Shown one piece after another: positions 28,780 to 51,227 of a stretch of DNA of 64,000 nucleotides. Position numbers and translations under genes: made by a program. The notes beneath the pieces were generated by a model. That model worked only from the letters and a program-made list of their open reading frames with translations, made no database searches and was not told the origin of the DNA. Source of the DNA: Pecten maximus (Eukaryota); the NCBI RefSeq assembly GCF_902652985.1, contig NC_047028.1:10664001-10728000 (forward strand). The letters run 5' to 3'. The stretch's first letter is position 1. Each line of letters starts with the position of its first letter.

Positions 28780-29007
28780 CTGTAAACGTGGTTATTTTCG
28801 CGGTGGGTTAATTTCGCAATTTCAAAATGTAAACTATACGCGTGGGGTACTTTTCGTGATCGATCAACCTTCGTTTGTAGTTCGAGACTTCGTAAATAGA
28901 TATTACATGTAAAATGTAAACTATACGCATGGGGGAAATTTTCGCGAACAAAAGGACTCCGCTTAATTAGCGTATATTCCCCCTCGCGTAAATTTCCACG
29001 TTTACAG
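28780..29007. mobile_element. MITE with TA target duplication, downstream of TIR-BIR copy 1
   Basis: TA-CTGTAAACGTGG ... CCACGTTTACAG-TA. Confidence 0.85.
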
Positions 29008-29140
29008 TAAATAAAAATGAGGTGATTAATAAACTTTGCAAATGAAAAACATATTTTAAGGTATCACGCTTTTGTTGAAACCAAACAGATATGAACAATA
29101 ATGAGAATGAGATATCCTAATTTCACAATTCTGAGAATAA

Positions 29141-30802
29141 TTACGACTTGGATTGTGAAGGAGGAAATAAAAACACATTTTCATGTTTGATTAAACGATT
29201 ATCCAGTTTTTTTATCATAAACGACACTACCGTTCTCGGAGAGGCATGAGCTGCAGTCTGCAGAATACTATCGATATAGTCCATGCCTTTGACAGACGTC
29301 ACGTGTGCACAAGATGGTGAGAGCCAAGCATGCGTTGCCATCACATTTTGACCATGCTTTATAGAGGTCAGTACCAAACCACACGAATAACACGTAAAGG
29401 CATCACCACACCCCGTATAGTTAAACCCAGCCTCTGCTATTTCATTGATCAGCTTCTGTCTATCAAACGACTGTGCGCTGCCTTCTGGCATTTTTTCAAG
29501 GGAAAATGATTCAAATGATTTTACTCTAGCTTCAAAAGTCCTATACGTCTCATTAACAAGATTTTTGCCCTTTCGAAATGACGTTTTTGCATTTTTGATA
29601 AAATCGTCTGTCTGATTCTGCCTGACAAAAGGACACAGCTGATTGAGTGCAGCATGCGTGACCCAGGGGTTGTCATCCTGTCGCCAGCTGATCACGAATC
29701 TTCCACATGCGAAACAAGTAGTAAACAGAGGTGCCCCACTGAAGAAAAATCCTGCTTTGGCAAGTGATTCTGTCTTTGGAACCAGATCATTTTCATGGAA
29801 TACCGGAAATGAATCATATCGCGTTTTTTCGTCGGCATAATCAGGGAATTTGATGGCATGGTTCGGTGACTTCTCGGTAGTGATCTGGTACCTTGTTTTA
29901 ATCCATAACTGTCTGATGTAATCCTGATCAGAAAGGCGACCGTTTAACGTGCACCCGAGAATAAAAACTACTCCTGCCCGTCGGAGAGTAGAAACGTCCA
30001 TTATATTTCCACAAAGAGAAGCGAAAGCACTATCGAATTCCGTAAGGTCAATATTAGTTTTGATTGTATCTTTGTCGTAAATTAGACTAACCGTTGTATT
30101 GGGTGTACATAACATAGAACATTCGCCGCACACTTTAGTAATACCCAAAGAACTATGTTTCTGACTGTGCTTTAGAAATTCGTCCATATCTATACGAAGG
30201 ACTTCGCTATTAATCTCCACGATGACACCATAAACGTTGAACAACATCAAAGGAAGATCCAAGCCATGCTGATGTAGGCTTTGTGTTACATTCGTAGCCC
30301 CAAGAAAATGACTAAAGGATGGCTGCTTGTAACGTAAATGCCGTATCAAGTGTACCTGCCATCCATCATGTTCGGAATCTACTATCTTTGTAGATGCAAG
30401 ACAGGCCAGGTCATCTTCAAGGAAAAGAGAACTGTTTAAACGCAAACAAACAACGTTGCTTTTCGATACCCGACGTAAAGCTAATGATGGAAAGTATGAG
30501 AGGATGGAGTGATTTCTAAATGGAATAGACAGCATGAACAGAATTTTATCAGTATGATCTAAAAGATATTCAAAGTTATGGAATATTCTCTGTTCTACAA
30601 AGTTGTCTTCAAGTGTGAAACATTCTATGCCGTCGTCTGTTAAGAGGGGCATCAACTCCTTTTTGACAAACTCCAAGTCATGGTCATGATAAACGACGAA
30701 TACCTTAGGCCCCCGAACGTCAGCTGGAAGAACTAAGGCGGTGCTATCCTCAGGAGAAAAACTTTCCCTGTTTACAGGTAAAGACGAAATATATGACCCC
30801 AT
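29141..30802 (-). CDS. TIR-like domain plus two BIR domains (IAP-family fusion protein), copy 1, 553 aa, single coding exon
   Basis: aa 33-158 TIR-like (VFVVYHDHDLEFVKKELMPLL..GIECF..DNF...IFHNFEYLLDHTDKILFMLS). BIR1 has C363-C366-H383-C390 and BIR2 has C471-C474-H491-C498, both with Cx2Cx16Hx6C spacing and RxxSF and AxAGF motifs. MGSYIS start preceded by an in-frame stop; splice acceptor at 30846-30847. Confidence 0.9.
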   Translation of the reverse strand: MGSYISSLPVNRESFSPEDSTALVLPADVRGPKVFVVYHDHDLEFVKKELMPLLTDDGIECFTLEDNFVEQRIFHNFEYLLDHTDKILFMLSIPFRNHSILSYFPSLALRRVSKSNVVCLRLNSSLFLEDDLACLASTKIVDSEHDGWQVHLIRHLRYKQPSFSHFLGATNVTQSLHQHGLDLPLMLFNVYGVIVEINSEVLRIDMDEFLKHSQKHSSLGITKVCGECSMLCTPNTTVSLIYDKDTIKTNIDLTEFDSAFASLCGNIMDVSTLRRAGVVFILGCTLNGRLSDQDYIRQLWIKTRYQITTEKSPNHAIKFPDYADEKTRYDSFPVFHENDLVPKTESLAKAGFFFSGAPLFTTCFACGRFVISWRQDDNPWVTHAALNQLCPFVRQNQTDDFIKNAKTSFRKGKNLVNETYRTFEARVKSFESFSLEKMPEGSAQSFDRQKLINEIAEAGFNYTGCGDAFTCYSCGLVLTSIKHGQNVMATHAWLSPSCAHVTSVKGMDYIDSILQTAAHASPRTVVSFMIKKLDNRLIKHENVFLFPPSQSKS

Positions 30803-32098
30803 AGCAGCACTGGTACTGTATGCTGGTCACTAGTCCAGGTTTTCTCTGTAAAAATATAGTATAACAATGTTTTAAACGTTTTAAACAGTGATTGGTACAA
30901 TATTTGGTAGTGTTTGAAACAGTGATTGGTACAATATTTGGTAGTGTTTGATACAGTATTTGGTACAATGTATAGTACAGTGTTTTGTAAATTGCTTGGA
31001 TCATTACATAGTGCACTGTTTGCTATCATACGTGTACAATCACTTATCAAACATTTAAAGCGTTTACATCTGCAAAATTGGCAACAAGAAATCGACTGTT
31101 ATTATAGAATACTTAAATTAATTATTTATGTATTTGTGGTTCAGTTGGTCTTGATTTAAGTAAGATTGTAATACCTAATAATTTGAAAAGTATCTGTCAT
31201 CAATATCTGTTAGACACATAAATTTCAAACAAGCAAAAATGTTTTCGGTTTTTGTTTTTTGTTTTTTGGTTTTCTTTCTCGTTTTTGTTGTTGTTGTCTT
31301 TTAATTCCACTTTATATTCTACGTAGCTTACATCAGCCAAATGAAAGGGAGATGCATAATATATGATGACCTTAGTCCATATGCTATCTGAAGAGTATTA
31401 ACGCCATTCATTATTATTGTAAAAAAAGAAGCTGCAGTGTCGTACAACCTCTGTTTTGAAATGCTAAATTTTAATGTATTAATCATATAAATGTATTCAA
31501 CGATACCCGGAAATTTTAATATTGTTAAAAGACGTTTATATACCAATCACATGTCATAATATGGTATCGAATGGTGCTCTTACCATTGTAAAGTCTAATA
31601 ATTGATTTTGATAATCGTGTTAGCGCAAACCCAAATGCAAACTCTTGTAGAATGTCAAGCTGGGCGTCTCTTGGTAGTTTTGACAGGCGCTTGCGATTTT
31701 TATGATTCTGCTTGTTTTTTTTCATACTGCTCGCCCTACTAAAACTAATGTATACCAATTTTATAGTGTCCCTGAAACTCTTGTGATATGGAGTATAATG
31801 ACGATATCAGAGAGAATTTCGGAATTTGATTACAGGAATATAAATTATTAAATTTGAAATTAGTTTTTGTGACTAGGCAAACTATATAGATGCACGAAAA
31901 TATCAAACACATTTTGATGAAAATTATTTAATGCATGCATTGAAATCAGATTTTTGAAAACAATACATTTAACAAATTTTTTAGAAGCAAGAATCAGTAA
32001 AGCATAGACGCCTTAATACTAAAATTTCAGTCTCTTAATAACTAGTTTTGTTACATCACTGACCTTATCGGTTAACTCAACCACGTTTTGTGTAAACA

Positions 32099-32121
32099 GG
32101 AAATTCCCACTCCTTTAAATA
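32099..32121 (-). promoter_or_regulatory. Putative promoter of TIR-BIR copy 1: TATA-like box and NF-kB site
   Basis: Minus strand reads CCGGAAG...TATTTAAA GGAGT GGGAATTTCC, then a candidate splice donor AAG|GTCAGT at 32064/32063. Confidence 0.5.
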
Positions 32122-33884
32122 GAAAACATAATCACGCTTCCGGTTCGGTTGACTAAACCGGCTATTGTTAAGCTTGAATTGTTCGTCGTGTATGTAGTGT
32201 ATTGATCGTCTTGGCGTATGTGTTACTACTGTAACCCTGACTGAGCGACTCGTCATGTATTTGTGTACTGTATAATTTATTATTACTTGCACAATACACA
32301 TAGTTTACCATTGACAATGCTATTAAAACCAAATTTTAGACAACTAGTTTATACCTATATCAATAGTTACCAGATAAATCAAATTTTAGACAACTAGTTT
32401 ATACCTACGTCCATAGTTACCAGATACACGAAATCCAGCTTCTGTCACGTTTGTAAACTACCGACATGGCTCCCCGGTTATTATGTCTATACCATGCCTG
32501 CTTTACGTTCAAAATAGACAGATATCTTAATATTGTACCGTAGCTAACATAGTCTTAAAGCTTGACAACATATACTTACTTTTTTGTAGCGATGTTCCAA
32601 TCCCGATTATAATGGTATGTGTTCATCCCCTCGATTATTTGGATGCCATACACCATCATGATTAAAATAATGTTAGATATTTCACAGAAGTAGAAATGTA
32701 AGGATTAAACACGGTCGATATATATTTCCTCCTTTCTCGATACAGACGTGTCACAGTCTATAGAACACAAAGGGCCTTCACGTTATGTTGACAGTAATAA
32801 TTGGCAGATAAAAATGTCGATAATGCTGAATGTTAAACCAGGTGTAACAGTGTATGACACATACAGTTTGTAAACGGCGTTGCCAGTTATATATGTATAC
32901 CCACTATACCACTCCATATACATATAGCCAGTCTCGCCTGTCCTATGGATTGCATGCATCTAAATATAAATCGTCTGTTGTTGCAGCTGTGAACTCCCCA
33001 GCTTAGATCTATGTCAATCTTATATCTTTTTAAAGAAGTACATTTTATTGTGACTATATTTTCAAAAAGAAGAATGGCCGTGAAAAATATTTTGTTTGGA
33101 ATATATACAGTGGCTATTAAAAAAAATTATGCTGAGATAATTTCATTTTTGAAACACTTCCTATTTGTAAGGAAATCCTCTGGGTACTACAGAAGGCGCG
33201 GTAAAATAAGGAACGCATGTTTTCAACACTTAATTTATTATATTTCTGTTGTATTTAGTATTAAATGATAAAAGGAAGTCAAACCATTGCATGTTTCATA
33301 TAGATGTAACATTGAAGTTTGTTTATAAGGATGATAATAATAATAATAATGTTTAGGTCAAACAAAACAGATTATGATGTTTTCCCGTCTCATATCAATT
33401 TGAAAAAAAAACAAACGCACTCTCATTAAGTACACATTTTATCTAATAGATTTGGACAAAATTAATCGTGTGCCTTATATGATAACTATCAACGACACAA
33501 TTGTATCACTCTACATCCAATAGCTGTCGCATTAGTATCTGCCTTGATAAATAGGACAGAAACAATATTTATCATTGGTATGTCTATATAGTATATTGTA
33601 GAGTAGCCTATTCTTGTATTCAATCAATAATGATTACTCTTTTTGTCGGAGGTGTAAATATTTAACTATGGTTAGTCAGAAGAGTGTATACATTCTAAAA
33701 CAATGTTATTAATGTATTTCTGTTTATAAAATTACAATATCACGTGAGCAAATACCACATGGACTGCTAGGTTTGCTACTGCAGTTCCATTTCTTCAGAA
33801 ATGTTCACTGCCTTGTTGATACTTGAATCATGAAATATATGATCATATCAAATACCCCAAATATGGATGGAATCGTCAGTGTTT

Positions 33885-35104
33885 TCAATAATTGAAGTCA
33901 ATATTATAAGTCGATGAAGTTAATGTTGATGACATTCCGATTTCAGGACTCAGGTACGTAGATGCCGTATCTGGGGATTCAGCACTACACGACGACGTCA
34001 CTTCCTTTGGACAGTGATTTCCTCCTATAGGTACAGTCAGTTTCAGAATATGTTTGAATGCCGCTTTGGATCGTTGAAAGTTTGTCACAGGAGGTACGTC
34101 TCTTCCTGTTTCTGTTGTGTTCGGCGACAGGTTACTAAAGATTTCACCAGTCATGTCCTGTGGTATAATGATGCTTAGATTACTGCTAATAGTTTGCAAG
34201 TGTCGATAAGGAAAACTATATGTGAGTTTACCGGGTATGTGGTACCCAGGCAGGTAGCCATCGTGGTTAAAGGAAGGCCTGTTTGTGTAAGAATTTGTCC
34301 CCGTGACACTATCGATACTGTCCCTCCGTCGAATACACGGAGGCAATCTTTTCTGCAATTCAGAATAAAAGTTATCCCCCCTCATATCAATATGTTTTAA
34401 TCGTTTAAAAAGTTTACTTTCTGTAAACGAACACGATGTATTTTGATGTGAAGTTGTGTCCAGAATGGTTATCCTGAAATATTTTTTGTGCTGCACCATG
34501 CTGTTAAATATATTTTCGTGAACTTTTTCTTCTGTTGAATAGTTCGGAATAAAAAACACAACATCACTTTTCTTTATGGTATTGATTTCTGCTGTAGAAG
34601 CACCTGAAAAAGAAGCAAAGAATATGCCGTAAGTCACCATGACCCGTTTGAAGTGGTTATGCCAATTACGAAAAGTTAATGCCATCTACATGGTATTTAC
34701 CTTTGACTTATGTTTAAGAAACGGCAGTGTTGTCGGATGAAGCATTCATGCAACATTAAACATATATTTATGAATATTATGAAGGTGAAATTTCATTTCC
34801 TATTGGTCTTTATATCAACAAGTTTCTTTCTTGTCACGAGGAAGCCTTTTCCTTCATATCTGACTTTGAGGACACCTTGTCTTCACAGAGTTTCAACTGA
34901 TTGATAAAGCATTTTACCTCCACCCGTTAAATCAGCAGAACAGACAACTTTAAGTGACGGTTGTGCGTAGGTCATCAGTATGTCGTACAATTTCTTAGCT
35001 GGGGAGACATCTTCATCACAGTGGCAGATGTACACTTGCTTGTCACTTCCAATGGACTTGCTATTGCCTAATGATACCAAATTTTCCACGAATGTTAAAT
35101 TCAT
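33885..35104 (-). pseudogene. Partial duplicate of the Ig-TIR receptor: only the two cytoplasmic (TIR plus tail) exons, frame intact; pseudogene or cytosolic TIR isoform
   Basis: Exons 35067-34918 and 34603-33885 are near-identical to 46089-45940 and 45625-44952. Homology stops at 35794, just before the TM exon. An in-frame ATG at 35104 would give 301 aa. Confidence 0.75.
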
Positions 35105-36019
35105 CGCTTTATAATGCAGTAATCTTTAAATTGTACAATGAGTTGCTGTTGGTTTTCAAATCTAGATGTTAAATTCAATATGAATAAATCCAAAGATTAT
35201 TTATGAAGAAATAAAAATATATCAGAAATATGAATATATCTTTTTACAAAACTTCAAGGTCAGAAACATCCTGAATAAAATAAGCATTGAAATCATGTGT
35301 AACTAAATGAAAAAAAATACCATAACAATACATTCACTAAATTCGAAGGTTTGACATAATTACAATTTCAAAATGCAAAGTAAAATAAGGCCAGATATTC
35401 ATTTTGCACAACTCAAATTAAGATATTGAGTGTTTTATAAAACTTAAAGCTACGAAACCATTAACACTGTAATGTGTTTGTTCCGCTTGCCCATTTTGTC
35501 CCCTTATCTGAATTTCCAGTCTTTGGCCCCTGGAGTAATTGACGTGTTAACAAAAATAAAATACCCGTGTGATGTACAGGAATTTGAAGTATATTTTGGT
35601 AAATATATGGCATGTATCTATTGCTAATTTCAAATTTAAATATTTGCGCTATCTTAGCAAGGAACTGCCTAGAGTTGGAATTATGAGAAAGATGAATGTC
35701 AACAAAGGTAGTTTTAATGATTGCTTGTTTTTGTTTGATGCGTTATCTTAACCCCATTTTATTATTTATTTATTTTTCTGAATTGCAATACTCTAGATTA
35801 TATACTCCAATATTGTTTGCAACACATTTATGAAGTTTGTCGCCAAGATTATGCATATATATTTACCAGAGTAATTGATCTTTCTTTGGTAAGCCTTTTT
35901 GAAGCACCCTGAAAGGTCACTCACGTTGTCAGAGCCACGAAGATTTCTAGCTAAATTACTAAACCAAATTCAATTAAAGATTTTCTTTCTTCAGTTAGAC
36001 CTCCAAAGAAGTTGAATTA

Positions 36020-36243
36020 CTGTAAACGTGGTTATTTTCGCGGTGGGTTAATTTCACGATTTCAAAATGTAAACTATACGCATGGGGGTAATTTTCGCGA
36101 TCGATCCACCTTCGTTTGTAGTAACACTAAACAATCGAACTTGAACTTGTAAATTATACGCGCGGAGGAAATTTTCGCGAACAAAAGGAGACTCCGCTTA
36201 ATAAGCGTAAATTCCCCTCTTGCGTAAATTTCCACGTTTGCAG
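36020..36243. mobile_element. MITE with TA target duplication, downstream of TIR-BIR copy 2
   Basis: TA-CTGTAAACGTGG ... CCACGTTTGCAG-TA; same insertion site as 28780-29007. Confidence 0.85.
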
Positions 36244-36372
36244 TAAACAAAATGAGATGCTCAATAAATTTTACAAATGAAAGAATTATTAAGTACCACG
36301 CATTTGTTGAAACCAAACCGATATGAATAATAATGAGAATGAAGTATCCTTGTTTTACAATTATGAGAATAA

Positions 36373-38034
36373 CTACGACTTGGATTGTGAAGGAGGAAAT
36401 AGAAACACATTTTTATGTTTGATTGAACGATTATCCAGCTTTTTTATCATAAACGACACTACCGTTCTCTGAGATGCATGGGCTGCAGTTTGCAGAATAC
36501 TATCGATATAGTCCATGCCTTTGACAGACGTCACGTGTGCACAAGATGGTGAGAGCCACGCATGCGTTGCCATCACATTTTGACCATGCTTTATAGAGGT
36601 CAGTCCTAAACCACACGAATAACACGTAAAGGCATCACCACACCCCGTATAGCTAAATCCAGCCTCTGCTATTTCATTGATTAGCTTCTGTCGATCAAAC
36701 GAATGTGCGCTGCCTTTTGGCATTTTATCAAGGGAAAATGATTCAAATGATTTTACTCTAGCTTCAAAGGTCCTATACGTCTCATTAACAAGATGTTTGC
36801 CCTTTTGAAATGACGTTTTCGCATTCTTGATAAAATCGTCTGTCTGATTCTGCCTGACAAAAGGACACAGCTGATTGAGTGCAGCATGCGTGACCAAGGG
36901 GTTGTCATCCTGTCGCCAGCTGATCACGAATCTTCCACATGCGAAACAAGTAGTAAACAGAGGTGCCCCACTGAAGAAAAATCCTGCTTTGGCAAGTGAT
37001 TCTGTCTTTGGAACCAGATCGTTTTCATGGAATACTGGAAATGAATCATAACGCGTTTTTTCGTCGGCATAATCAGGGAATTTGATGGCATGGTTCGGTG
37101 ACTTCTCGGTAGAGATCTGGTACATTGTTTTAATCCATAACTGTCTGATGTAATCCTGATCATTAAGGCGACCGTTTAACGTGCACCCGAGAATAAACAC
37201 TACTCCTGCCCGCCGGAGAGAAGAAACGTCCATTATATTTCCACAAAGAGAAGCGAAAGCACTATCAAATTCAGTAAGGTCCATATTGGTTTTGATTGTA
37301 TCTTTGTCGTAAATTAGACTAACCGTTGTATTGGATGTACATAACATGGAACATTCGCCGCACACTTTAGTAATACCCAAAGAACTATGTTTCTGACTGT
37401 GCTTTAGAAATTCGTCCATATCTATACGAAGGACCTCGCTAATAATCTCCACAACGACACCATAAACGTTGAACAACATAAAAGGAAGATCCAAGCCATG
37501 CTGATGTAGGCTTTGTGTTACATTCGTAGCCCCAAGCAAATGACTGAAGGATGGCTGCTTGTAACGTAAATGCCGTATCAAGTGTACCTGCCATCCATCA
37601 TGTTCGGAATCTACTATCTTTGTAGATGCAAGACAGGCCAGGTCATCTTCAAGGAAAACAGAACTATTTAAACGCAAACAAACAACGTTGCTTTTCGATA
37701 CCCGACGTAAAGCTAATGATGGAAAGTATGAGAGGATGGAGTGATTTCTAAATGGAATAGACAGCATGAACAGAATTTTATCAGTATGATCTAAAAGATA
37801 TTCAAAGTTATGGAATATTCTCTGTTCTACAAAGTTGTCTTCCAGTGTGAAACATTCTATGCCGTCGTCTGTTAAGAGGGGCCTCAACTCCTTTTTGACA
37901 AACTCCAAGTCATGGTCATGATAAACGACGAATACCTTAGGCCCCCGAACGTCAGCTGGAAGAACTAAGGCGGTGCTATCCTCAGGAGAAAAACTTTCCC
38001 TGTTTACAGGTAAAGACGAAATATATGACCCCAT
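36373..38034 (-). CDS. TIR-like domain plus two BIR domains (IAP-family fusion protein), copy 2, 553 aa
   Basis: Same length and motifs as copy 1; about 23 substitutions by manual count (~96% identity); all eight Zn ligands retained. Confidence 0.9.
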   Translation of the reverse strand: MGSYISSLPVNRESFSPEDSTALVLPADVRGPKVFVVYHDHDLEFVKKELRPLLTDDGIECFTLEDNFVEQRIFHNFEYLLDHTDKILFMLSIPFRNHSILSYFPSLALRRVSKSNVVCLRLNSSVFLEDDLACLASTKIVDSEHDGWQVHLIRHLRYKQPSFSHLLGATNVTQSLHQHGLDLPFMLFNVYGVVVEIISEVLRIDMDEFLKHSQKHSSLGITKVCGECSMLCTSNTTVSLIYDKDTIKTNMDLTEFDSAFASLCGNIMDVSSLRRAGVVFILGCTLNGRLNDQDYIRQLWIKTMYQISTEKSPNHAIKFPDYADEKTRYDSFPVFHENDLVPKTESLAKAGFFFSGAPLFTTCFACGRFVISWRQDDNPLVTHAALNQLCPFVRQNQTDDFIKNAKTSFQKGKHLVNETYRTFEARVKSFESFSLDKMPKGSAHSFDRQKLINEIAEAGFSYTGCGDAFTCYSCGLGLTSIKHGQNVMATHAWLSPSCAHVTSVKGMDYIDSILQTAAHASQRTVVSFMIKKLDNRSIKHKNVFLFPPSQSKS

Positions 38035-39300
38035 AACAGCACTGGTACTGTATGCTGGTCACTAGTCCAGGTTTTCTCTGTAAAAATATAGTATAACAAT
38101 GTTTTAAACGTTTTAAACAGTGATTGGTACAATATTTGGTAGTGTTTGATATAGTGTTTGGTACAATATTTGGTAGTGTTTGATACAGTATTTGGTACAA
38201 TGTATAGTACAGTGTTTTGTAAATTGCTTGGATCATTATATAGTGCACTGTTTGCTATCATACGTGTACAATCACTTATCAAACATTTAAAGCGTTTACA
38301 TCTGCAAAATTGGCAACAAGAAATCGACTGTTATTATAGAATACTTAAATTAATTATTTATGTATTTGTGGTTCAGTTGGTCTTGATTTGCGTAAGATTG
38401 TAATACCTAATAATTTGAAAAGTATCTGTCTTCAATATCTGTTAGACACATACATTTCAAACAAGCAAAACATGTTTTCGGTTTTTGTTTTTTGGTTTTT
38501 TTCCCCCCCGTTTGTTGTTGTTGTCGTCTTTTAATTCCACTTTATATTCTACGTAGCTAACATCAGCCAAATTAAAGGGAGATGCATATGATGACCTTAA
38601 TCCATATGCTATCTGAAGAGTATTAACGCCATTCATTATTATTGTAAAAAAGAAGCTGCAGTGTCGTACAATCTCTGTTTTGAAATGCTAAATTTTATTG
38701 TATTAATCATAAAAATGTATTCAACGATACCCGGAAATTTTAATATTGTTAAAAGACGTTTATATACCAATCACAGGTCATTATTTTGTATCGAATGTTG
38801 ATCTTACCCTTGTAAAGTCTAATAATTGATTTTGATAATCGTGTTAGCGCAAACCCAAATGCAAGTTCTTGTAGAATGTCAAGCTGGGCGTCTCTTGGTA
38901 GTTTTGGTTGTTTTCATACTGCTCGCCCTACTTAAACTAATATATATCAATTTTATATATATCAATGTCCCTGAAACTCTTGTGATATGGTGTATAATGA
39001 CGATATCAGAGAGATATTTTTCGGAATTTGATTACAGGAATATAAATTATTACATTTGAAATTAGTTTTTGTGACTGGGCAAACTATATAGATGCACGGA
39101 AATATCAAACACATTTTGATGAAAATTATGTAATGCATGCATTGAAATCAGATTTTTGAAAACAATACATTTAACAAATTTTTTAGAAGCAAGAATCAGT
39201 AAAGCATAAACGCCTTAATACTAAAATTTCAGTCTCTTAATAACTAGTTTTGTTACATCACTGACCTTATTGGTTAACTCAACCACGTTTTGTGTAAACA

Positions 39301-39323
39301 GGAAATTCCCACTCCTTTAAATA
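39301..39323 (-). promoter_or_regulatory. Putative promoter of TIR-BIR copy 2: TATA-like box and NF-kB site
   Basis: Same TATTTAAAGGAGTGGGAATTTCC block as copy 1. Confidence 0.5.
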
Positions 39324-41312: not shown

Positions 41313-41582
41313 TAGCGAGACCAGGGTTCGAACCCAGGACCCACTGAGCTACCTGGTCGCCGCTGATCAACCCAGTCCAGTTCCGCAACATTCCTCCCTC
41401 CTTTTATCAAATCTTCACCCCAAAAGACAACAGGTTCGGATATCCCGTTGCTTTAGCATCCTCCCAAAGGATTTGCAAGCTCGCTAAATATGTAACAGAA
41501 GAAAGATAGTAGCCAGACAGGGGTTCGAACACGAGACCCTGCAAACTCTACACATACACTTTACCACTGAGCTACCTGGTCG
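41313..41582 (-). repeat. Two tandem tRNA-derived (pseudo-tRNA or SINE head) units
   Basis: Minus strand GCGACCAGGTAGCTCAGTGG...GTTCGAACCC...GCTA occurs twice; the copy at 41313-41360 lacks the anticodon arm. Confidence 0.6.
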
Positions 41583-44500
41583 CTGGTGCACTAATACATG
41601 TTTGATGAGTCTGCGGTATGTTCGTGTTTGTCTCCTTTGGTATACACTTGTATATTACCGGTAATGTGGAAAACTTTTAAATTTTTTAAGATTGTTCCAG
41701 CACTGGCAACCTGTCTTTCCCTTGGTTGTCATTTAGCTTAAGAAGATATTTATCAATTTAATCTCTTTCATTTGATCATATAAAAACAGTGAATATTTCC
41801 CCAAATATTAAGTGTAATTGCTTTACACATACCCGTACCTTGTATTACTGACCACGATTGATGTTTAAACGGGAATGGACTACACATTCTTATCAAATAT
41901 CTGCATTACCTAAAACACTGAATTTTTTGGGAAAAAAAGCATGCAAGATTATTTTTGAGTCAGTCAGGTTAGTAGAGAAAGTTTTACTGTATTTGACATA
42001 TTAGCCGAAGTCATGAAAATGTGAAATTAAAAAAAAAATTGGTTATTGAAGATCAGAGAAATGTCAACAACAAATTTAAAAAGAATGGAATTGGGTTTTT
42101 CTCGGTCAGTTCTGATGGCCTGTGTAAACACGTTATGAAGATATAAAGTTCATTTTACACAATTGCCTGCTTCGATTGTCTATCTTTTAAAATTAAGTTC
42201 ATCTGTGTATATTTTTATTTTTTGAGGGGTTTTGTTTTATAAATCCTTGCAACAACTTTTTAAGTCATGTAGAATATGATTCTTGACAACTTGACTACAG
42301 TAAGAATTTAGCATTCAAAATCCATTGCGCTCCACACCATATTGTTTGTTGACAGTGACATTTTCACAGTTATTACATTACTTAATTAGAATACTGTGTT
42401 ATATATTTCTTGAATCCACTCGAATATAGAAATATTTCCTTCATTTTCCAAATCTGTAATTGAAATAATTGTAGAATATACATGTATGTGTTTGCAGTAA
42501 TAAGAAAATATTTTTTATTAATATTAACATATTTGGTGCATCAATCCAAAAATACTTGTTGACATATACTGCATTACTTTTGGTCGGATTTCAATACACA
42601 GAATGTAAGATTTTATTAATCAATAGATCTGGCAACCTCACCTTCTAACAGGTCAAAGACCTTTGATATGAGACTAATTAATGAGTATTCAGAGTTTCCT
42701 CTTGCCCCACCACCGGAAGTTAGACACTGACAAGCTCTCATACAGTTGTTGACTTGAGTTTAGGAACACATTCTCAAATGACAGATGATCATATGCTAAA
42801 TTAAGGGTTGGATTTTCACTAACTTGAAGAGTTGTGCCCCTTTGTTTTCTTTCCTATACATCTTATTCTAGCAGATTGACATTCATATTTGTTTCCAATT
42901 GTTCTACACCTCATTATATACATCTGATGACATTTGAAAGTGGGTGAAAAATGGAATAGGTTATTGTATTGAGTCACATTGACTTCATTTCTCCCAATTC
43001 ATCCAGTTCAAGAAATCTGGAAAATCCATTTTAGTTTCCATGTAGGTAAGATTTTAACATTTTATTGTTATGGTTGTTTTGCTTTCTATTGTTGGGGCAG
43101 AGGGCATATTCATATAAATCAGATATATAACTCCTATATAACATGGTTTACACTTGGTTATTTGTATACTTAAAATTTGTTTCCTTTCTTTTGTTAATAT
43201 CTCTGTGGTTATAACTTCTAGTCTCTCACATGAGTCTTTACACTTCCTTCTAGTAAATATCTTCAAAAGTTTCTTCTTATTTCTTTCTGTTTCCAGTTTC
43301 CTTTTGGTTAAAAAATTGTCATATTTAGTGGATTTTGAGAATTGGTTGATTTTCAAAATTTGCATTTGTTTTGCAATACATATACATCAATATTTTGCAT
43401 GCCTCTGTAACATATATATATAGAAATGTGCTGCTTCTTCCTTTTTAACAATAATTTCAATAAAATCTTTAGTTTGGTTAACACTTCCTATAATGTTGTT
43501 GAACATTTTGAATTGGTGGATCTGTCAGATCAGCACATATTCAGCACAGTAGTCCAAGATAACATTCCGGTTTAATTGTTTTTCTTCTGTATGGCTAACT
43601 TTATGATCTTTTCAAACTTGGTCTTGGGCATTATTTGGCTGGTCTGATTGTTGTTTAAGAATCTTGAGGCACTATGCTGGCTCCCAAGGAGGAGGGGTGG
43701 GACACAAAAGGACAATTCAACAATTTAATAGCACATGCATTCTGTAGTGATGGTCCCAAATCTTGAATGCTACCAGGTTTGTTTTTTTAAAAGGAAGGAC
43801 CTTTACCTTCATTAAAGACCACTGGCGCCAGGCGTGCAAAAAAACTTGAAAATCTTCAACTGAATAACCTTGAGGCCAAGATACCTTGTATTGGGCCTGT
43901 AGTATGCTGATGAAGTGATACAAAATTCAAGGTCACAGCCATCAAAAATGTTTAAATGTTTAAACCCTTTTTTTCTCAGTATCAAAAAAAGGTCCAGAGA
44001 AGAAGGTGATTCATACAGGCCCATATGGCCTCTTATTTGGTTGCTGCACAATTCCTTAAGTACTCTTTCATACTCGGATGTCAAAGGTCAATGTCACTAT
44101 TTCTGTCAAATGAAAACCAGTTGCTTGGAATACGACATGTAGCTTAAGATTTGAAAGACAAATGTTAAAGATAATGTAACTATAGATAGAAAAATACTGC
44201 AGATATCAATGAAAGACCATACTTTCCCTACATGAAAAAAGTATTAGAACCCAATGCTACTGGCATGGTCACACAATACTTCTTTTATATATTCTTTACA
44301 TGGATGGATAACGGCAGCATTTTAAATACTTTAATATATAAATACTTATTATCGGTTAGCTTGTAATAATAATAATGTTTAGGTCAAACAAAACAAATTA
44401 TGATGTTTTCCCGTCTCGTATCAATTTGAAAAAAACAAACGCACTCTCATTAAGTACACATTTTATCTAATAGATTTGGACAAAATTAATCGTGTGCCTT

Positions 44501-44951
44501 ATATGATAACTATCAAAGACAAAATTGTATCACTCTACATCCAATAGCTGTCGCATTAGTATCTGCCTTGATAAATAGGCCAGAAACAATATTTATCATT
44601 GGTATGTCTATATAGTATATTGTAGAGTAGCCTATTCCTGTATTAAATCAATAATGATTACTCTTTTTGTCGGATGTGTAAATATTGAACTATGGTTAGT
44701 CAGAAGAGTGTATACATTCCAAAACAATAATATTAATGTATTTCTGTTTATAAAATTACAATATCACTTGAGCAAATACCACATGGACTGCTAGGTTTGA
44801 TACTGCAGTTTCATTTCTTCAAATGTTCACTGCCTTGTTGATACTTGAATCATGAAATATATGATCATATCAAATACCCCAAATATGGATGGAATCGTCA
44901 GTGTTTTCAATAATAGAAGTCAATATTATAAGTCGATGAAGTTAATGTTGA

Positions 44952-47900
44952 TCACATTCCAATTTCAGGACTCAGGTACGTAGATGCCGTATCTGGGGAT
45001 TCAGCACTACATGGCGACGTAACTTCCTTTGGACAGTAATTTCCTCCTATAGGTACAGTCAGTTTCAGAATATGTTTGAATGCCGCTTTGGATCGCTGAA
45101 AGTTTGTCACAGGAGATACGTCACTTCCTGTTTCTGTTGTGTTCGGCGACAGGTTACTACAGATTTCACCAGTCATGTCCTGTGGTATAATGATGCTTAT
45201 ATTACTGCTACAAGTTTGCAAGTGTCTATAGGGAAAACTATATGTGAGTTTACCGGGTATGTGGTACCCAGGCAGGTAGCCATCGTGGTTAAAGGAAGGC
45301 CTGTTTGTGTAAGAATTTGTCCCCGTGACACTATCGATACTGTCCCTCCGTCGAATACACGGAGGCAATCTTTTCTGCAATTCAGAAAAAAAGTTATCCC
45401 GCCTCATATCAATATGTTTTAATCGTTTAAAAAGTTTACTTTCTGTAAACGAACACGATGTATTTTGATGTGTATTTGTGTCCAGAATGGTTATCCTGAA
45501 ATAATTTTTGTGCTGCACCATGCTGTTAAATATATTTTCGTGAACTTTTTCTTCTACTGAATAGTTCGGAATAAAAAACACAACATCACTGTTCTTTATG
45601 GTATTGATTTCTGCAGTAGAAGCACCTGAAAAAGAAGCAAAGAACATGCCGTAAGTCACCATGACCCGTTTGAAGTGGTTATGCCAATTACGAAAAGTTA
45701 ATGCCATCTACATGGTATTTACCTTTGACTTATGTTTAAGAAACGGCAGTGTTGTCGGATGAAGCATTCATGCAACATTATACATATATTTATGAATATT
45801 ATGAAGGTGAAATTTCATTTCCTATTGGTCTTGATATCAACAAGTTTTTTTCTTGTCACGAGGAAGCCTTTTCCTTCATATCTGACTTTGAGGACACCTT
45901 GTCTTCACAGAGTTTCAACTGATTGATAAAGCATTTTACCTCCACCCGTTAAATCAGCAGAACAGACAACTTTAAGTGACGGTTGTGCGTAGGTCATCAG
46001 TATGTCGTACAATTTCTTAGCTGGGGAGACATCTTCATCACAGTGGCAGATGTACACTTGCTTGTCACTTCCAATGGACTTGCTATTGCCTAATGATACC
46101 AAATTTTCCACGAATGTTAAATTCATCGTTTTATAATGCAGTAATCTTTAAATTGTACAATGAGTTGCTGTTGGTTTTCAAATCTAGATGTTAAATTCAA
46201 TATGAATAAATCCAAAGATTATTTATGAAGAAATAAAAATACATCAGAAATATGAATATATCTTTTTACAAAACTTCAAGGTCAGAAACATCCTGAATAA
46301 AATAAACATTGAAATCATGTGTAAATACATTCACTAAATTCGAAGGTTTGACATAATTACAATTTCAAAATGCAAAGTAAAATAAGGTCAGATATTCATT
46401 TTGCACAACTCAAATTAAGATATTGAGTGTTTGATAAAACTTAAAGCTACGAAACCATTAACACTGTAATGTGTTTGTTCCGCTTGCCCATTTTGTCCCC
46501 TTATCTGAATTTCCAATCTTTGGCCCCTGGAGTAATTGACGTGTTAACAAAAATAAAATACCCGTGTGATGTATAGGAATTTGAAGTATATTTTGGTAAA
46601 TATATGGCATGTATCTATTGCTAATTTCAAATTTAAATATTTGCGCTATCTCAGCAAGGAACTGCCTTTAGTTGGAATTATGAGAAAGATGAATGTCAAC
46701 AAAGGTAGTTTTAATGATTGCTTGTTTTTTGTTTGATGTGTTATCTTAACCCCATTTTATTATTTATTTATTTTTCTGAATTGCAATACTCTCGATTAAT
46801 GAAGAATGCATCCAAATATGAAAACTTACCTGTTATCGACATTACGAAGGTCATCTCTGACAACACTGTGACATGCAGCTTGCTCCTGATTAATGCAGTG
46901 ACTAACAGAAAACCCAAAATAGTCACGACCGAAAGGGGTAACAATACAGTCTTTAGAAGGTACGTCACAGTGCTGTCCTGGTCTGATGATCTGTACTGCA
47001 CCTCTGTGTGACAGAACAGAACAGACATTTAGACACACCAGCGACATCGTATACACCAAATGTTAGAAAATGCATACAATAACGTTGAAATAAATACCTA
47101 ATGAACACAAGCATACATTATATAACATAATCTTTCCGTCCTAAATGATTCTTTTAGGATGAAAACTACACACCACATATACATAATTTTCAGATAATTT
47201 CTAGAAACACAAACCAAATGTGATCAGATACGATGAACGTTAAAGAACACCGTCAAGTTTGGACCGTAAATATCGTAAATTATATGATTACGACTTATAA
47301 AAATACAACGAAGATAAAATCATCCTCATTGAATTGTATATAAACAACGTCCTGGAGGTGGTGGTCAGATCTTCCAACAGACTAGAGGAATACTAATTGG
47401 AACACACTGTGACCTCAGTTAGCTGTCTTGTTCGTGTTTTCATACGATTGAAGACCTCATCGGAATATGTAAGAAAGGCATTACAAAATCCTTCCCTTTT
47501 ACCAATACATAATTACATTGACGGCATATTGTACTTAAATAGCAAACATTCCATTGACCATGCCGATCAGATATACTCTGTAGAAACTGAATTAAAATAC
47601 GATACAGACTATTTGACATCAGCTGCCTATACCGATCTCTACTGACAATGTAAGCAACAGCTGAGCTGTGTGATCAATGTGGCTATTAAAATTTCCTTAT
47701 TGTTAAGTTTCGTGACAGGAGAAACCAATACGATTTCAAGAAATGCATTTTAGTAAGATCATGTAGAAGTTTAATGGTCTGCATAATGATTTCATTTAGA
47801 AATATTCTATTTCCTCATTCAATACGACGTTGTTGATGCTGGTTGATATGCTTATTGCCTGTTTCATCATCCTCAACCTTTATAACTTTCACTTGAAATT

Positions 47901-50900
47901 TGACTTAACCCGTATTTGACCTAAATTTGTATGGCGGTTTTCGTCGATGAGAAGACGCTTAATTTTCCGGAATTCCTTGCCGTTTCCTCCTTTTAAGTTT
48001 TCGGGAGTTTTCATGCAAATTTTTATTTTTGTTAATATCTTGCTCTAATTTACTTTGAATTTGAAATATAGTTTCATTATTATGTCAGAATTCTTTGTTC
48101 TTGAAATCGAGCAAGCCCTTATGTATGCTTATTTCTGATCTACATACATGAGGGAGTCTTTATAACTTTCTGTTACTGCGAGCAACATACAAGTTCACCA
48201 TTGAAATACGTAAATGTATTGTCCACTGACGTTAAGTATTAAAAATACAAATTATAATTACCACTCAGGACTGTGAAGTTCCTCGACACTTTCTCTGCCG
48301 TTCCTTTGTAGCATGCTGTTGCTGTGATGGATACCACTACACCCGGTTTTGCCACGAGAGATACAAATCCTCTGCAGATCCTCGGCACAGATCTATCGCT
48401 GTGAATGTAATAAGAACGCCAGAGTTATCTCCCTTGCACGTGCTTTATTTATTTTTTCAGATGGACGTTATTTTATAGCCACAAGTACACGGACTATTCA
48501 GAACATAATTTGATTAGGTGGTAGGATGGCACTGTGATGACACACTTCGCGATGGGTTTTCTCCGGGAACTCTGGTTTCCTCCCACAGTAAGACCCCACG
48601 CGATTCCACAAGAGCTAAGAAGAGTTATCAATATTGGTTGATATAACTTATTTCGAAATTGTTGCATTATAAATAAAGTCATTACATAATACTATGAGAA
48701 AGCAGTATTTACAACGATAACACATATTCAAATCATCACAAAAAATATCAAAAAATAAAATTCAATTCCAGTTCAACTGTTATTCATTTATTTCCGACAA
48801 AACATATTGTTGCATGCGTTTGCATGTTATAGGAACAAAGAAAAATATTGTTTATATTATATATATAATGTGGAGTAATTTACCTTGCACAGCCCTGTAT
48901 TACTACAGGCGGAACACGAGTTGTCCCTATGTTGTGCCCATCTTTATGATATATAATGTTGATATTTCTTTCTGCAGCGTCACATCCAAAGTTGACATGA
49001 TAAGAAAACGTGACATTCTGTTGATCAGCCTTTACATAAGAGGTATCACTAGACAACTTGACTTCCGGCTTGTCAAAACTTTTTCTACAATCTGAAGGAT
49101 GTCAAATACAATAGACAAATATACATTACTGTGAAAGCATAGGGTCATGAAGTAAATTATCTGAAAAATATTCAACTGAAATTGACCTGCAAATCATCTG
49201 AAAAAAAGATCAATTTTAAAGGAAGAAATTTTCAGGTAAATTTCAGATCAATTTAATGTCAGTTTGACCTGATAAAATCTGAAAATGAATGTGAAATGAA
49301 GTGTGAAGTTTCCGTGCCAATTTTAGGTAAATTGCAGGTCAAATTCAGGTCAATTTCTTGATATGAATCGACTATTTCGACCTGAAAATGTTCACATGCA
49401 ATAAACATGAATTAGAACTAAATGATTTAGAATGGAGCTAAAACATGAATATTCTATTTGTTAATATCTCCTACAATAAAACTATGTCGAAATAAAAGAA
49501 AATGAAAATTATTCAATGTTGTTATTGTATCTAAAGGCCGGCTACAGCTGTTCGTTAAATTTCTCAATTGATATAGTTGGACATATTATTCCATGTTCTC
49601 TCGTCCGACAAAGAAAAATATATTTTCGAAATAAAGAATCTCATGCAGAATGTTTCTTCCTTTTTGTGATAAGCGAACGCTTTTGTAGACAGCACTGGAT
49701 ACATTGTTATTGAACACCCATTTCCGAACCTATGACCTGTTCTTCTACAATAACAGATTTTAGCCAATGACAAAAGCTGTTACATCATCGACAATGTGTT
49801 ATACATGTATAACATTAATAAACATTGCAATATATAATCTCCATCAATACAATACTTACCAATTGCTGTTAGATGAACAGTCTGGTTACCATTACTAGTG
49901 ATACACCTATACAAGCCCATTTTGTGTCTACCTATTTGATCAAATGATATCGTCTCGTTGGTATACGGGAGTAGTTTCCATGTCTTTGTATCCCGTGAGA
50001 AATACCATTTCCGAGTGGTACCGTTATATCTATTGTCACAGCAGGGAATGTATATCGTCTCAAACTTTGGGCTACCTAACTGTACCTCCATCAATGGACA
50101 AACAGGCTTGAACTGACCATCTGAAACCAGTAAAACAAAATAATGGGGCACATGATAAGTCAAATAATAAAATAACGGAGTTTTTACACTACACTGTATA
50201 TCATTTGTATCTGAAAGGAACCAATAAGGAGTGCTGGCTAAAAGAAGGAGGATATGTGTATTCCAAATTATATGGACAAAATACAAAAGGAGAGATATAG
50301 ATCTTTGTTGTGTAACAAAACTATCGATTCAGTGCTGAACTGAAATCCATACCCGTAAGAATAGTCAAAGATAACATAGGTGAGACTGTGGTTAGTCATC
50401 ATTTTAATGTATCTAACAAACAACGTATGTACGATTTCACAGGTGAAGCGGATATGGGGCTTCAAGTAGTTGAATACCAATGTAAACAGGCCTGCATTTT
50501 CTCTGCACATCTCAGGTTTCGTCATTGTAAAATTTTCTAATACACGTGCAAATTCAAGTTCAAATTCATTTTATTCTCTTTTCAAATGATTTATAGAGAA
50601 AACATATCACAAAATGTCTTAAGGTCAAATGAAAGGAGTAGATTAGTCATTTCAGGTCAAGAAATTGAACTGAATTTTCATGTCGATTTCGGGTCGATAT
50701 TTTGTCAGGTCAAATTCACCTTAAGACATTTTGCCTTTGTTTATAGAGTTAAATACTTATTAAACACGTGATTAGTCATATGATACATAAAACAGAATAC
50801 ATATTACACTATTGAAAGTCTATTTTGTCAAAAAAAAAACCAAACAAGCTACTAATAATAATCACTGTTAAACCACTTACCGGCCGTACTTGTTTTACAA

Positions 50901-51019
50901 TAATCCCTCTCTGGAATGGTTACACAACTGTCTTCCCGGGCACACAATGGTTGAGTAAGGGGTATAGTACAACATAGTGTTATCCCCCTCAACAACACGA
51001 GGATTTCCTGGGGTTTCAT
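44952..51019 (-). CDS. IL-1-receptor-like type I membrane protein: signal peptide, 2 Ig-like domains, TM, TIR, Ser/Thr-rich tail; 7 coding exons, 580 aa
   Basis: Phase-compatible GT-AG exons: 51019-50881 (MKPQEILVLLRGITLCCTIPLTQPLCAREDSC...); 50120-49860 (Ig: IYIPCC..KWYF..MGLYRC..TVHLTAI); 49091-48884 and 48398-48262 (second Ig-like); 47003-46830 (TM: VLLPLSVVTILGFLLVTALI-RSK); 46089-45940 (KQVYICHCDEDVSPAKKLYDIL..LKVVCSADLTGG); 45625-44952 (..IKKSDVVFFIPNYS..LKHIDMRRDNFFSELQKRL plus tail). Total 1743 nt. Probable 5'UTR exon 52300-52191 and a first exon ending at 52714. Confidence 0.85.
48520..48690 (+). mobile_element. V-domain-type SINE fragment in a receptor intron
   Basis: GGGTTTTCTCCGGGAACTCTGGTTTCCTCCCACAGTAAGACCCCACGC. 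Confidence 0.65.
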
Positions 51020-51227
51020 CACAGACAGTGATCAAAGTAGTGCCGCAATAATTATTACACCTGACGAGAAAAATTGATAGCAATATAAACTTCTTGTACC
51101 ACACTGCATAGCATTAGTACTGCGTTGTGTCCATTTGATTTTGAATCTGATCCAGACAGACAGCTAGACGGTATGTACTCTGGCCATCAAAAGCAACCAT
51201 GTGTTATAGGTATGCATATATATTAAC

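What the first reader, a model, noticed from the sequence alone, without database searches (positions are those of the whole stretch)
29141..51019. Candidate self-contained immune module: Ig-TM-TIR (IL-1R-like) receptor clustered with myristoylated TIR-BIR-BIR adaptor genes
Seen: a 7-exon Ig2-TM-TIR receptor lies directly upstream of, and on the same strand as, genes for a TIR-BIR-BIR protein, and parts of both were duplicated together. Known: TIR domains assemble by homotypic contacts. In vertebrates and flies IAPs (cIAP1/2, XIAP, DIAP2) reach receptors indirectly through adaptors such as TRAF2, RIPK or IMD, and no TIR-containing IAP is part of those pathways. Inference: the TIR-BIR protein is the dedicated adaptor of this receptor and brings BIR domains straight to the receptor tail, linking ligand sensing to cell-death or NF-kB control without MyD88. 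I know of no description of this pairing but cannot search the literature.
Basis: partly seen in the sequence, partly recalled or inferred. Interest (0 to 1): 0.92.

Follow-up and report, generated by a model that had tools for sequence, protein, structure and literature searches.

The report
Scallop Ig-TIR receptor beside TIR-BIR genes
A scallop chromosome carries a real, spliced gene for an immunoglobulin-type membrane receptor right next to two recently duplicated genes for an unusual bivalve-only protein that joins a TIR signalling domain to two BIR (IAP) domains, but nothing beyond their adjacency yet shows that the two work together.

Summary
Two intronless minus-strand ORFs of 553 aa (29141-30802 and 36373-38034) encode TIR, an unassigned alpha/beta domain, then BIR-BIR, with no RING. 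The TIR fold is solid (Z 16.1 to the MyD88 TIR) although Pfam misses it. Both BIRs pass Pfam.

The family occurs across bivalves: scallops, mussels, pearl oyster, hard clam and a unionid. This genome, inferred to be Pecten maximus, has four copies.

Spliced transcript contigs from four studies confirm the 7-exon upstream gene. All six introns are GT..AG and the protein is 580 aa: signal peptide, two Ig-like regions, a TM segment, a TIR-like region and a tail. Its Ig and TIR assignments are weak. Pfam gives nothing, and only custom exon-by-exon profiles and motifs support them.

A 7.2-kb tandem duplication copied the BIR gene together with the receptor's last two exons. A 4.2-kb transposon inserted later.

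The "dedicated adaptor" reading is untested rather than supported:
- The paralogous TIR-BIR pair 27 Mb away has no such receptor nearby.
- The receptor has no paralog in the genome.
- The complex prediction gave no answer.

TIR-BIR is best read as a bivalve "shortcut" architecture, a new variant of the known cytosolic TIR proteins.

The parts
29141..30802 (-). TIR-BIR gene A: intronless 553-aa ORF. Myristoylation-type N-terminus MGSYIS; TIR aa 31-159 (about 30326-30712); unassigned alpha/beta domain aa 164-310 (about 29873-30313); BIR1 aa 328-393 (29624-29821); BIR2 about aa 425-505 (about 29288-29530). No RING.
   Evidence: ORF; Pfam BIR x2, E 1.4e-26; models; TIR fold; BIR fold and sequence
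36373..38034 (-). TIR-BIR gene B: tandem duplicate of gene A. 23 aa differences, dS 0.079, dN/dS 0.24.
50881..51070 (-). Receptor exon 1: 5'UTR plus the ATG at 51019 and a signal-peptide-like start (46 codons + 1 nt).
   Evidence: spliced contigs; splice sites and phase
49860..50120 (-). Receptor exon 2: Ig-like domain 1, with a C...W...GLYRC pattern.
   Evidence: weak IgSF hits in PDB sequences (Otk E 0.017, DIP-alpha 0.018, IL1RAPL1 0.11); no Pfam hit
48884..49091 (-). Receptor exon 3: first half of Ig-like domain 2.
   Evidence: motif only, no profile hit
48262..48398 (-). Receptor exon 4: second half of Ig-like domain 2.
   Evidence: motif only
46830..47003 (-). Receptor exon 5: a hydrophobic transmembrane segment of about 24 residues followed by RSK.
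   Evidence: read directly from the sequence
45940..46089 (-). Receptor exon 6: N-terminal third of the TIR-like domain (box-1-like VYICHCDED up to the BB-loop-like DLTGG).
   Evidence: custom TIR HMMs 6.1-9.0 bits, reached by 0 of 500 shuffles, aligned to the start of the profile; no Pfam or PDB hit
44952..45625 (-). Receptor exon 7, coding part: rest of the TIR-like domain plus a tail of about 110 aa. Stop codon at 44952-44954. The 3'UTR runs on to about 44300-44600.
   Evidence: custom TIR HMMs 2.0-4.2 bits, reached by 9-21 of 500 shuffles, aligned to the later part of the profile; no Pfam or PDB hit
33885..35067 (-). Truncated duplicate of receptor exons 6-7 (E6' 34918-35067, 100% identical; E7' 33885-34603, 96.6%, stop shifted by 15 codons). 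It has no TM or Ig exons. dN/dS 0.63. Probably a relic.
28623..35800 (.). Tandem duplication unit 1: BIR gene A with its flanks plus the receptor 3' fragment.
   Evidence: self-BLAST; flank identities
35872..46798 (.). Tandem duplication unit 2: BIR gene B with its flanks, the transposon insertion, and receptor exons 6-7 with part of intron 5. The unit ends 32 nt short of exon 5.
40163..44363 (.). 4.2-kb dispersed repeat (transposon) present only in unit 2, between BIR gene B's upstream region and the receptor's 3' end.
   Evidence: at least 117 matches genome-wide, full-length copies at 93% identity; absent from unit 1

Best explanation
Shown. The locus holds two kinds of real genes, head to tail on the minus strand.
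(a) A 7-exon gene encodes a 580-aa type I membrane protein: signal peptide, two Ig-like regions, one TM helix, a divergent TIR-like cytoplasmic domain and a tail.
(b) Downstream lie two copies of an intronless gene for a bivalve-specific protein built as TIR, a family-specific alpha/beta domain, BIR and BIR, without a RING.

A recent tandem duplication of about 7.2 kb (dS about 0.05-0.08) produced the second BIR gene and a truncated copy of the receptor's last two exons. A transposon then inserted into one unit.

Inferred. The TIR-BIR proteins are cytosolic TIR-domain adaptors or regulators. In scallops they are possibly membrane-tethered by N-myristoylation. They would join TIR assemblies under TLR or Ig-TIR receptors through homotypic TIR contacts. 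Their BIRs would then act as protein-binding modules, for caspases or IBM-bearing proteins and for TRAF- or TAB-like partners. That makes them a 'shortcut' between TIR signalling and cell-death or NF-kB control, like the direct-connection proteins described in amphioxus. Lacking a RING, they can scaffold or sequester but cannot ubiquitylate.

Whether they serve the neighbouring receptor in particular is not shown. The adjacency may be incidental.
For: Gene reality:
- Intact ORFs under purifying selection (dN/dS 0.24).
- A 73%-identical ortholog annotated in Ylistrum balloti.
- 22 family clusters, mostly 520-570 aa, from Pecten, Mytilus, Pinctada, Mercenaria and Sinanodonta.

Domains:
- TIR fold, Z 16.1 to the MyD88 TIR; TRR-2, IL-1RAcPb and IL-18Rbeta TIRs follow at Z 14.9-15.9; Foldseek finds TLR1/10/6.
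- Pfam TIR or TIR_2 hits in 7-8 of 19 family members.
- BIR: Pfam 1.4e-26, fold hits to cIAP1/XIAP BIR3 and DIAP1 BIR2, and both CX2CX16HX6C zinc sites can be read in the sequence.
- No RING, CARD or UBA hit.

Receptor:
- Six GT..AG joints in four studies' contigs and one open frame.
- Exon 6 and exon 7 align in the right order to TIR profiles above shuffles.
- Exon 2 draws weak IgSF hits.

Duplication. Transposon.

Concept of TIR-to-apoptosis shortcut proteins: PMC2575513. The IG-TIR receptor class is already listed for oyster and Aplysia (PMC4346834, PMC9334734).
Against: - No functional data of any kind.
- The BB-loop Pro-Gly, present in most family members, is lost in the pectinid copies. 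This could weaken or change TIR-TIR signalling.
- The BIR peptide-groove residues are only partly conserved. This is my reading against XIAP BIR3 numbering recalled from memory.
- The receptor's TIR and Ig domains fail every curated profile.
- The myristoylation motif is confined to the scallop clade.
- The complex prediction gave no answer.
Confidence: 0.55

Rival explanations
1. The TIR-BIR protein is the dedicated, MyD88-independent adaptor of the adjacent Ig-TM-TIR receptor, and the two genes form a self-contained module kept together by selection.
For: - Same strand, with about 3 kb between the receptor's stop codon and the BIR gene's ATG in the ancestral arrangement (unit 1).
- Both proteins carry TIR-type domains.
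- A myristoylation-type N-terminus, conserved in the Ylistrum ortholog, would place the adaptor at the membrane.
Against: - The older paralogous TIR-BIR pair at C14:37.46 Mb has no receptor-like exon within about 30 kb.
- The receptor's TIR exons have no other copy in the genome, and no relative of 138-439 aa was found in the protein database, whereas the TIR-BIR family is bivalve-wide.
- The co-duplication copied only the last two receptor exons, as expected for an arbitrary segmental breakpoint.
- The genome has at least 150 TIR-coding places, so my rough estimate is that about 0.4 adjacent pairs of unrelated TIR genes would arise by chance.
- The complex prediction gave no answer.
Confidence: 0.12
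2. The TIR-BIR proteins are negative regulators or decoys. With no RING and an altered BB loop, they would cap or sequester TIR assemblies, or bind caspases or IAP antagonists, and so dampen signalling rather than transmit it.
For: - No RING, UBA or CARD.
- BB-loop PG lost in the pectinid clade.
- Purifying selection shows the proteins are used.
Against: No direct evidence. Most other family members keep the PG motif. BIR-only proteins can also act as positive scaffolds.
Confidence: 0.2
3. The upstream gene is an IgSF membrane protein whose cytoplasmic region is not a TIR at all. In that case the two gene types share no interaction domain and the cluster is a coincidence.
For: No hit to Pfam TIR, TIR_2 or any other family. 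No PDB sequence hit for exons 6 and 7. hhalign of exon 6 against the TIR-BIR family profile gave probability 0.4%. The ESM Atlas gave nothing.
Against: Exon 6 scores above all 500 shuffles with two of the three custom TIR HMMs (own-genome TIRs, and those combined with the TIR-BIR TIRs) and above 498 with the third, and aligns to the start of each profile. Exon 7 aligns to the later part (reached by 9-26 of 500 shuffles). The two hits are in the right order and sit just after the TM segment, as in TLR and IL-1R proteins. The alternating beta/alpha motif pattern is also readable in the sequence.
Confidence: 0.2

Closest known systems
Vertebrate TIR adaptors, especially TRAM/TICAM2 (myristoylated) and MyD88
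   Same: A cytosolic protein with a TIR fold (Z 16.1 to the MyD88 TIR, Z 12.5 to the TRAM TIR). The N-terminal Met-Gly-x-x-x-Ser pattern resembles that of TRAM. A second protein-binding module follows the TIR.
   Different: The effector module is BIR-BIR rather than a death domain. There is an extra alpha/beta domain of unknown fold. The BB-loop proline is absent in the scallop copies. There is no detectable sequence relationship beyond the fold (11-22% identity).
IAP/BIR proteins (XIAP, cIAP1/2, DIAP1/2, NAIP) and the expanded bivalve IAP repertoire (PMC7831173, PMC8917759)
   Same: Two canonical zinc-binding BIR domains. BIR1 is closest to NAIP BIR2/3, DIAP1 BIR2 and XIAP/cIAP BIR3. BIR2 is closest to XIAP BIR1/BIR2.
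   Different: No RING, UBA or CARD. An N-terminal TIR, which neither of the two bivalve IAP surveys I read lists as a partner domain.
IG-TIR / IL-1R-like receptors (IL-1R family, SIGIRR; the 'IG-TIR' class counted in oyster and Aplysia, PMC4346834, PMC9334734)
   Same: The order signal peptide, Ig-like domains, single TM, then a cytoplasmic TIR-like domain directly after the membrane. Exon 2 weakly resembles IgSF proteins, including IL1RAPL1.
   Different: Two Ig-like regions instead of three. Neither the Ig nor the TIR passes a curated model. Orthology to the IL-1R family is not shown. There is a C-terminal tail of about 110 aa of unknown function.
Amphioxus 'direct connection' (shortcut) immune proteins (PMC2575513)
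   Same: Domain shuffling fuses a receptor-proximal TIR with a domain of the apoptosis network. This is predicted to bypass hub adaptors.
   Different: A different phylum and a different partner domain. That paper discusses TIR with NACHT, NB-ARC/WD40 and other partners. I found no TIR-BIR in its main text; its supplementary tables were not read.

Membership tests
TIR-domain proteins | TIR (flavodoxin-like) fold of about 130-150 aa | tested here: met
   For the TIR-BIR protein, aa 31-159: VIA Z 16.1 (MyD88 TIR), 15.9 (Hydra TRR-2), 15.6 (IL-1RAcPb); Foldseek finds the TLR1 TIR at E 2.6e-5.
TIR-domain proteins | Match to the curated Pfam TIR or TIR_2 model above the gathering score | tested here: not met
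   TIR-BIR A/B: TIR_2 14 bits against a cut-off of 28. No hit in six-frame genome scans. Relatives in the same family do hit at E down to 1e-7.
TIR-domain proteins (receptor's cytoplasmic domain) | TIR fold or profile match | tested here: inconclusive
   No Pfam or PDB hit exon by exon. Custom TIR HMMs: exon 6 reached by 0-2 of 500 shuffles, exon 7 by 9-26 of 500, in the right order. The joined domain was not searched or folded.
TRAM-like myristoylated adaptors | N-terminal Gly2 in a myristoylation context | tested here: met
   MGSYISS fits the pattern G-{EDRKHPFYW}-x(2)-[STAGCN]-{P} (pattern recalled from PROSITE). MGSYMS recurs in the Ylistrum ortholog. It is not found in the wider family. 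The lipid modification itself was not tested.
Signalling TIR adaptors | BB-loop Pro-Gly | tested here: not met
   The scallop copies read EDN-FVEQ where most family members have PGK or PGN.
IAP/BIR proteins | BIR domain with CX2CX16HX6C zinc ligands | tested here: met
   Pfam BIR in two stretches, E 1.4e-26. Both ligand sets can be read in the ORF. Fold hits with TM 0.8-0.9 normalised to the target.
E3-ligase IAPs (XIAP, cIAP, DIAP) | C-terminal RING | tested here: not met
   No RING, zf-C3HC4, UBA or CARD hit at E up to 10. The protein ends 33 aa after BIR2.
IL-1R-like / IG-TIR receptors | Signal peptide, extracellular Ig domains and a single TM | tested here: inconclusive
   The signal-like start and the TM segment can be read. 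Ig1 has weak IgSF hits at E 0.017-0.1. Ig2 rests on motifs only. No Pfam Ig model hits.
Receptor-adaptor gene module | Linkage conserved across paralogs or species | tested here: not met
   The paralogous TIR-BIR pair at C14:37458633 and 37473451 has no receptor-like exon in 70 kb.
Receptor-adaptor gene module | Physical TIR-TIR interaction | tested here: inconclusive
   Complex prediction gave 'no answer' (score 0.27, mark 0.34). This is evidence neither for nor against binding.

The most novel reading that the evidence does not exclude
In scallops the myristoylated TIR-BIR protein is the private adaptor of the adjacent Ig-TIR receptor. It brings BIR domains directly to the receptor tail, so that ligand sensing controls caspases or NF-kB without MyD88, IRAK or TRAF. 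That would be a two-gene immune pathway that duplicates as a unit.
Probability: 0.1. Interest if true: 0.8.

Novelty: new variant of a known kind. Interest (0 to 1): 0.45.

Why it matters
Bivalves have hugely expanded TIR and IAP repertoires, and how these families are wired together is unknown. A conserved, bivalve-wide protein that physically joins a TIR to two BIRs is a concrete, testable link between Toll/IL-1-type signalling and cell-death control. No such fusion takes part in the vertebrate or fly pathways.

There is also a practical point. Curated TIR models miss both TIRs at this locus, so published TIR and IAP censuses in molluscs probably overlook this family.

The receptor-adaptor pairing would be the more striking result, but it is still only a hypothesis.

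Tried and rejected
I could therefore not inspect the Ylistrum ortholog's neighbourhood or the database gene models.
- The search for homologous proteins with the exon-7 ORF found nothing. Its length filter of 138-439 aa excludes a 580-aa receptor, so this says little.
- Pfam, PDB sequence and ESM Atlas searches of single receptor exons were blank or noise.
- hhalign of exon 6 against the TIR-BIR family profile gave probability 0.4%.
- Genome-wide six-frame Pfam TIR and TIR_2 scans listed 97 and 146 places, none in the window and none near the paralogous pair.
- The middle domain of the TIR-BIR protein got no Pfam, PDB-profile or Atlas hit. Its cysteines are not conserved in the paralogs, which rules out my passing idea of a Cys/His catalytic or zinc site.
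- Complex prediction returned 'no answer', score 0.27. The input was the receptor's exon-6 and exon-7 pieces as two chains plus the adaptor TIR. This counts neither for nor against binding.
All receptor searches were exon by exon, by reference.
- Literature: the strings 'TIR-BIR', 'BIR-TIR', 'TIR-IAP' and 'IAP-TIR' occur in no held paper. The key survey of bivalve TIR proteins (Gerdol et al. 2017, Dev Comp Immunol) is not held, so it may already describe this family.
- The 30-letter loose end of one contig beyond 51070 is not in the window.
Full report
**Where we are.** The window is C14:10664001-10728000 of a 918-Mb assembly. The window's own protein and Pecten maximus LOC117341971 both sit on a contig of 38,909,756 bases. 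The closest annotated relative is from the scallop Ylistrum balloti, at 73% identity. I therefore take the genome to be Pecten maximus. This is an inference.

**The TIR-BIR genes.** Two intact minus-strand ORFs of 553 aa lie at 29141-30802 (A) and 36373-38034 (B).
- Pfam finds two BIR stretches (E 1.4e-26) and nothing else above threshold. TIR_2 reaches only 14 bits, E 0.07.
- A phmmer search of residues 1-320 against 1.8 billion representatives found 22 relatives, most of them 520-570 aa long.
- The relatives come from Pecten, Mytilus, Pinctada, Mercenaria and Sinanodonta. They are named 'uncharacterized' or 'TIR domain-containing protein'.
- Of 19 aligned members, 17 hit BIR, 8 hit TIR_2 (best E 4.5e-6) and 7 hit Pfam TIR (best E 1.3e-7).
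- AlphaFold models built on this alignment have pLDDT 78.
- Residues 31-159 are a TIR fold. Foldseek's top hits are the TLR1, TLR10, TLR15, TLR6 and MyD88 TIRs. VIA gives Z 16.1 to the MyD88 TIR and 15.9 to Hydra TRR-2, with the IL-1RAcPb, IL-18Rbeta, SARM1, TIRAP, TRIF and TRAM TIRs below.
- The whole-protein model hits cIAP1/XIAP BIR3, DIAP1 BIR2 and NAIP.
- By sequence, BIR1 is closest to NAIP BIR2/3, DIAP1 BIR2, ML-IAP and the BIR3 class. BIR2 is closest to XIAP BIR1/BIR2.
- Both CX2CX16HX6C zinc sites are intact. There is no RING, CARD or UBA.

It has no Pfam, PDB-profile or Atlas match. Its cysteines are not conserved in the paralogs.

**N-terminus and BB loop.** MGSYISS fits the N-myristoylation pattern. 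The Ylistrum ortholog has MGSYMS at residue 20 of its annotated, probably over-extended, N-terminus. No other family member starts this way. Most family members have a PGK or PGN BB loop, but the scallop clade has lost it.

**The receptor.** Logan contigs from four runs of four studies, one of them a declared RNA library, were laid on 45201-51200. They show the same six joints, all CT..AC on the plus strand, which is GT..AG on the minus strand.
- With the stated cut shifts, the exons are 50881-51070, 49860-50120, 48884-49091, 48262-48398, 46830-47003, 45940-46089 and 45625 down to the stop at 44952-44954.
- Donors are GTAAGT, GTAAAT, GTAATT or GTAAAA and acceptors are CAG or TAG.
- Translating exon by exon while carrying the phase gives one frame of 580 codons from the ATG at 51019.
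- Read directly, the protein has a signal-like start, an Ig-like exon with C...W...GLYRC, and a second Ig-like region split over exons 3-4. A 24-residue hydrophobic segment followed by RSK comes next, then a box-1-like VYICHCDED about 25 residues after the membrane.
- No curated model recognises any exon. PDB sequences give nothing for exons 6 and 7.
- Exon 2 draws weak hits that are mostly IgSF: Otk 0.017, DIP-alpha 0.018, IL1RAPL1 0.11.
- I built three HMMs: one from 20 TIR domains of this genome, one from the TIR-BIR TIRs, and one from both.
- Exon 6 scored 6.1 bits against the own-genome HMM and 9.0 against the combined one (no shuffle of 500 reached either), and 3.7 against the TIR-BIR HMM (2 of 500). 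It aligned to the start of each profile.
- The first 115 residues of exon 7 scored 2.0, 4.2 and 2.1 bits against the same three HMMs (21, 9 and 26 of 500 shuffles) and aligned to the later part, so the two hits are in the right order.
- I read this as moderate support for a divergent TIR, not as proof.

**The duplication.** Self-BLAST shows that 28623-32967 matches 35872-40162 (94-95%) and that 33338-35800 matches 44364-46798 (96.5%).
- This is one tandem unit of about 7.2 kb. It carries the BIR gene, 2.1 kb of its upstream DNA, and the receptor's exons 6-7 with part of intron 5. It ends 32 nt before the TM exon.
- The 4.2 kb present only in unit 2 (40163-44363) is a dispersed repeat with at least 117 matches and full-length copies at 93% identity. 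It is therefore a later transposon insertion.
- BIR A against B gives dS 0.079, dN 0.019 and dN/dS 0.24. Both genes are constrained.
- The truncated receptor copy keeps its splice sites and an open frame, but dN/dS is 0.63 and the stop has shifted. It is probably a relic.
However, a breakpoint inside an intron is what an arbitrary segmental duplication gives.

**Is it a module?** The genome has only four TIR-BIR genes: this pair and an older pair at 32-33% identity at C14:37458633 and 37473451.
- In 70 kb around that pair I found a Rac-like GTPase, an EF-G-like gene, repeats and a BIR fragment. I found no exon resembling any receptor exon, even at tblastn E 10.
- The receptor's TIR exons occur nowhere else in the genome.
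- The genome has at least 150 TIR-coding places. By my rough estimate, about 0.4 adjacent pairs of unrelated TIR genes would arise by chance.
- Complex prediction gave no answer.
- Co-expression could not be examined, because the single read-laying run went to the receptor model.

**Literature.**
- IG-TIR proteins are an established class in oyster and Aplysia inventories (PMC4346834, PMC9334734).
- The two bivalve IAP surveys I read classify IAPs by BIR, RING, DD, UBA and UBC, and do not list a TIR partner (PMC7831173, PMC8917759).
- No held paper contains 'TIR-BIR' or its variants.
- The main survey of bivalve TIR proteins (Gerdol et al. 2017) is not held and may cover this family.
- The idea that shuffled proteins connect TIR directly to the apoptosis network was set out for amphioxus (PMC2575513).

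**Verdict.**
- The TIR-BIR architecture is real, conserved across bivalves and apparently unnamed. It is a new variant among cytosolic TIR proteins.
- The most likely mechanism is homotypic recruitment into TIR assemblies, with the BIRs serving as binding modules. The protein would act either as a positive shortcut or as a decoy.
- The specific pairing with the neighbouring receptor remains a hypothesis, which I put at about 10%.

Noticed in passing
window 29873-30313 (gene A, aa 164-310) and 37105-37545 (gene B): A conserved alpha/beta domain of about 150 aa sits between the TIR and BIR1. It has invariant G180, G192, H216 and G288 across the family and no Pfam, PDB-profile or Atlas match. The architecture is therefore TIR-X-BIR-BIR, not TIR-BIR-BIR.
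   Followed up: partly
window 40163-44363: A 4.2-kb dispersed repeat (at least 117 genome matches, full-length copies at 93% identity) has inserted between BIR gene B's upstream region and the receptor's 3' end. It is absent from the other duplication unit.
   Followed up: yes
G000:C14:37458546-37460198 and 37473349-37475124 (L004, L003): A second, older tandem pair of TIR-BIR genes lies 27 Mb away on the same chromosome, with a BIR2-like ORF fragment between the two genes at 37465345-37465614. No Ig-TIR receptor lies nearby.
   Followed up: partly
window 30326-30712, and family alignment A1: Pfam TIR and TIR_2 miss this TIR and the receptor's TIR-like domain, even though the fold match is strong (Z 16). 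The BB-loop PG motif, present in most of the family, is lost in the scallop clade. Domain censuses based on Pfam would overlook these genes.
   Followed up: partly
window 51070 (receptor exon 1, upstream edge): One contig (run X5) continues beyond 51070 with 255 letters that are not in the window. This is either a further 5' exon outside the window or a chimeric contig.
   Followed up: partly
window 49357 to 50723: Contigs in two runs join 49357 to 50723 with 19 other letters in between. This is separate from the receptor's splice joints and is unexplained.
   Followed up: no
window 19981-23331, minus strand: Exon-like ORFs resemble an EF-hand/DM10-type (EFHC-like) ciliary protein. This is my reading of the translations only.
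   Followed up: no
window 5231-6640; 13889-14721; 59228-59710; 53169-54939 and 57278-59066: There is a long tandem array with a 16-nt register (about 87% identity) and two shorter tandem arrays. A further 1.8-kb direct duplication (95.5% identity) lies upstream of the receptor in a stretch without long ORFs.
   Followed up: no
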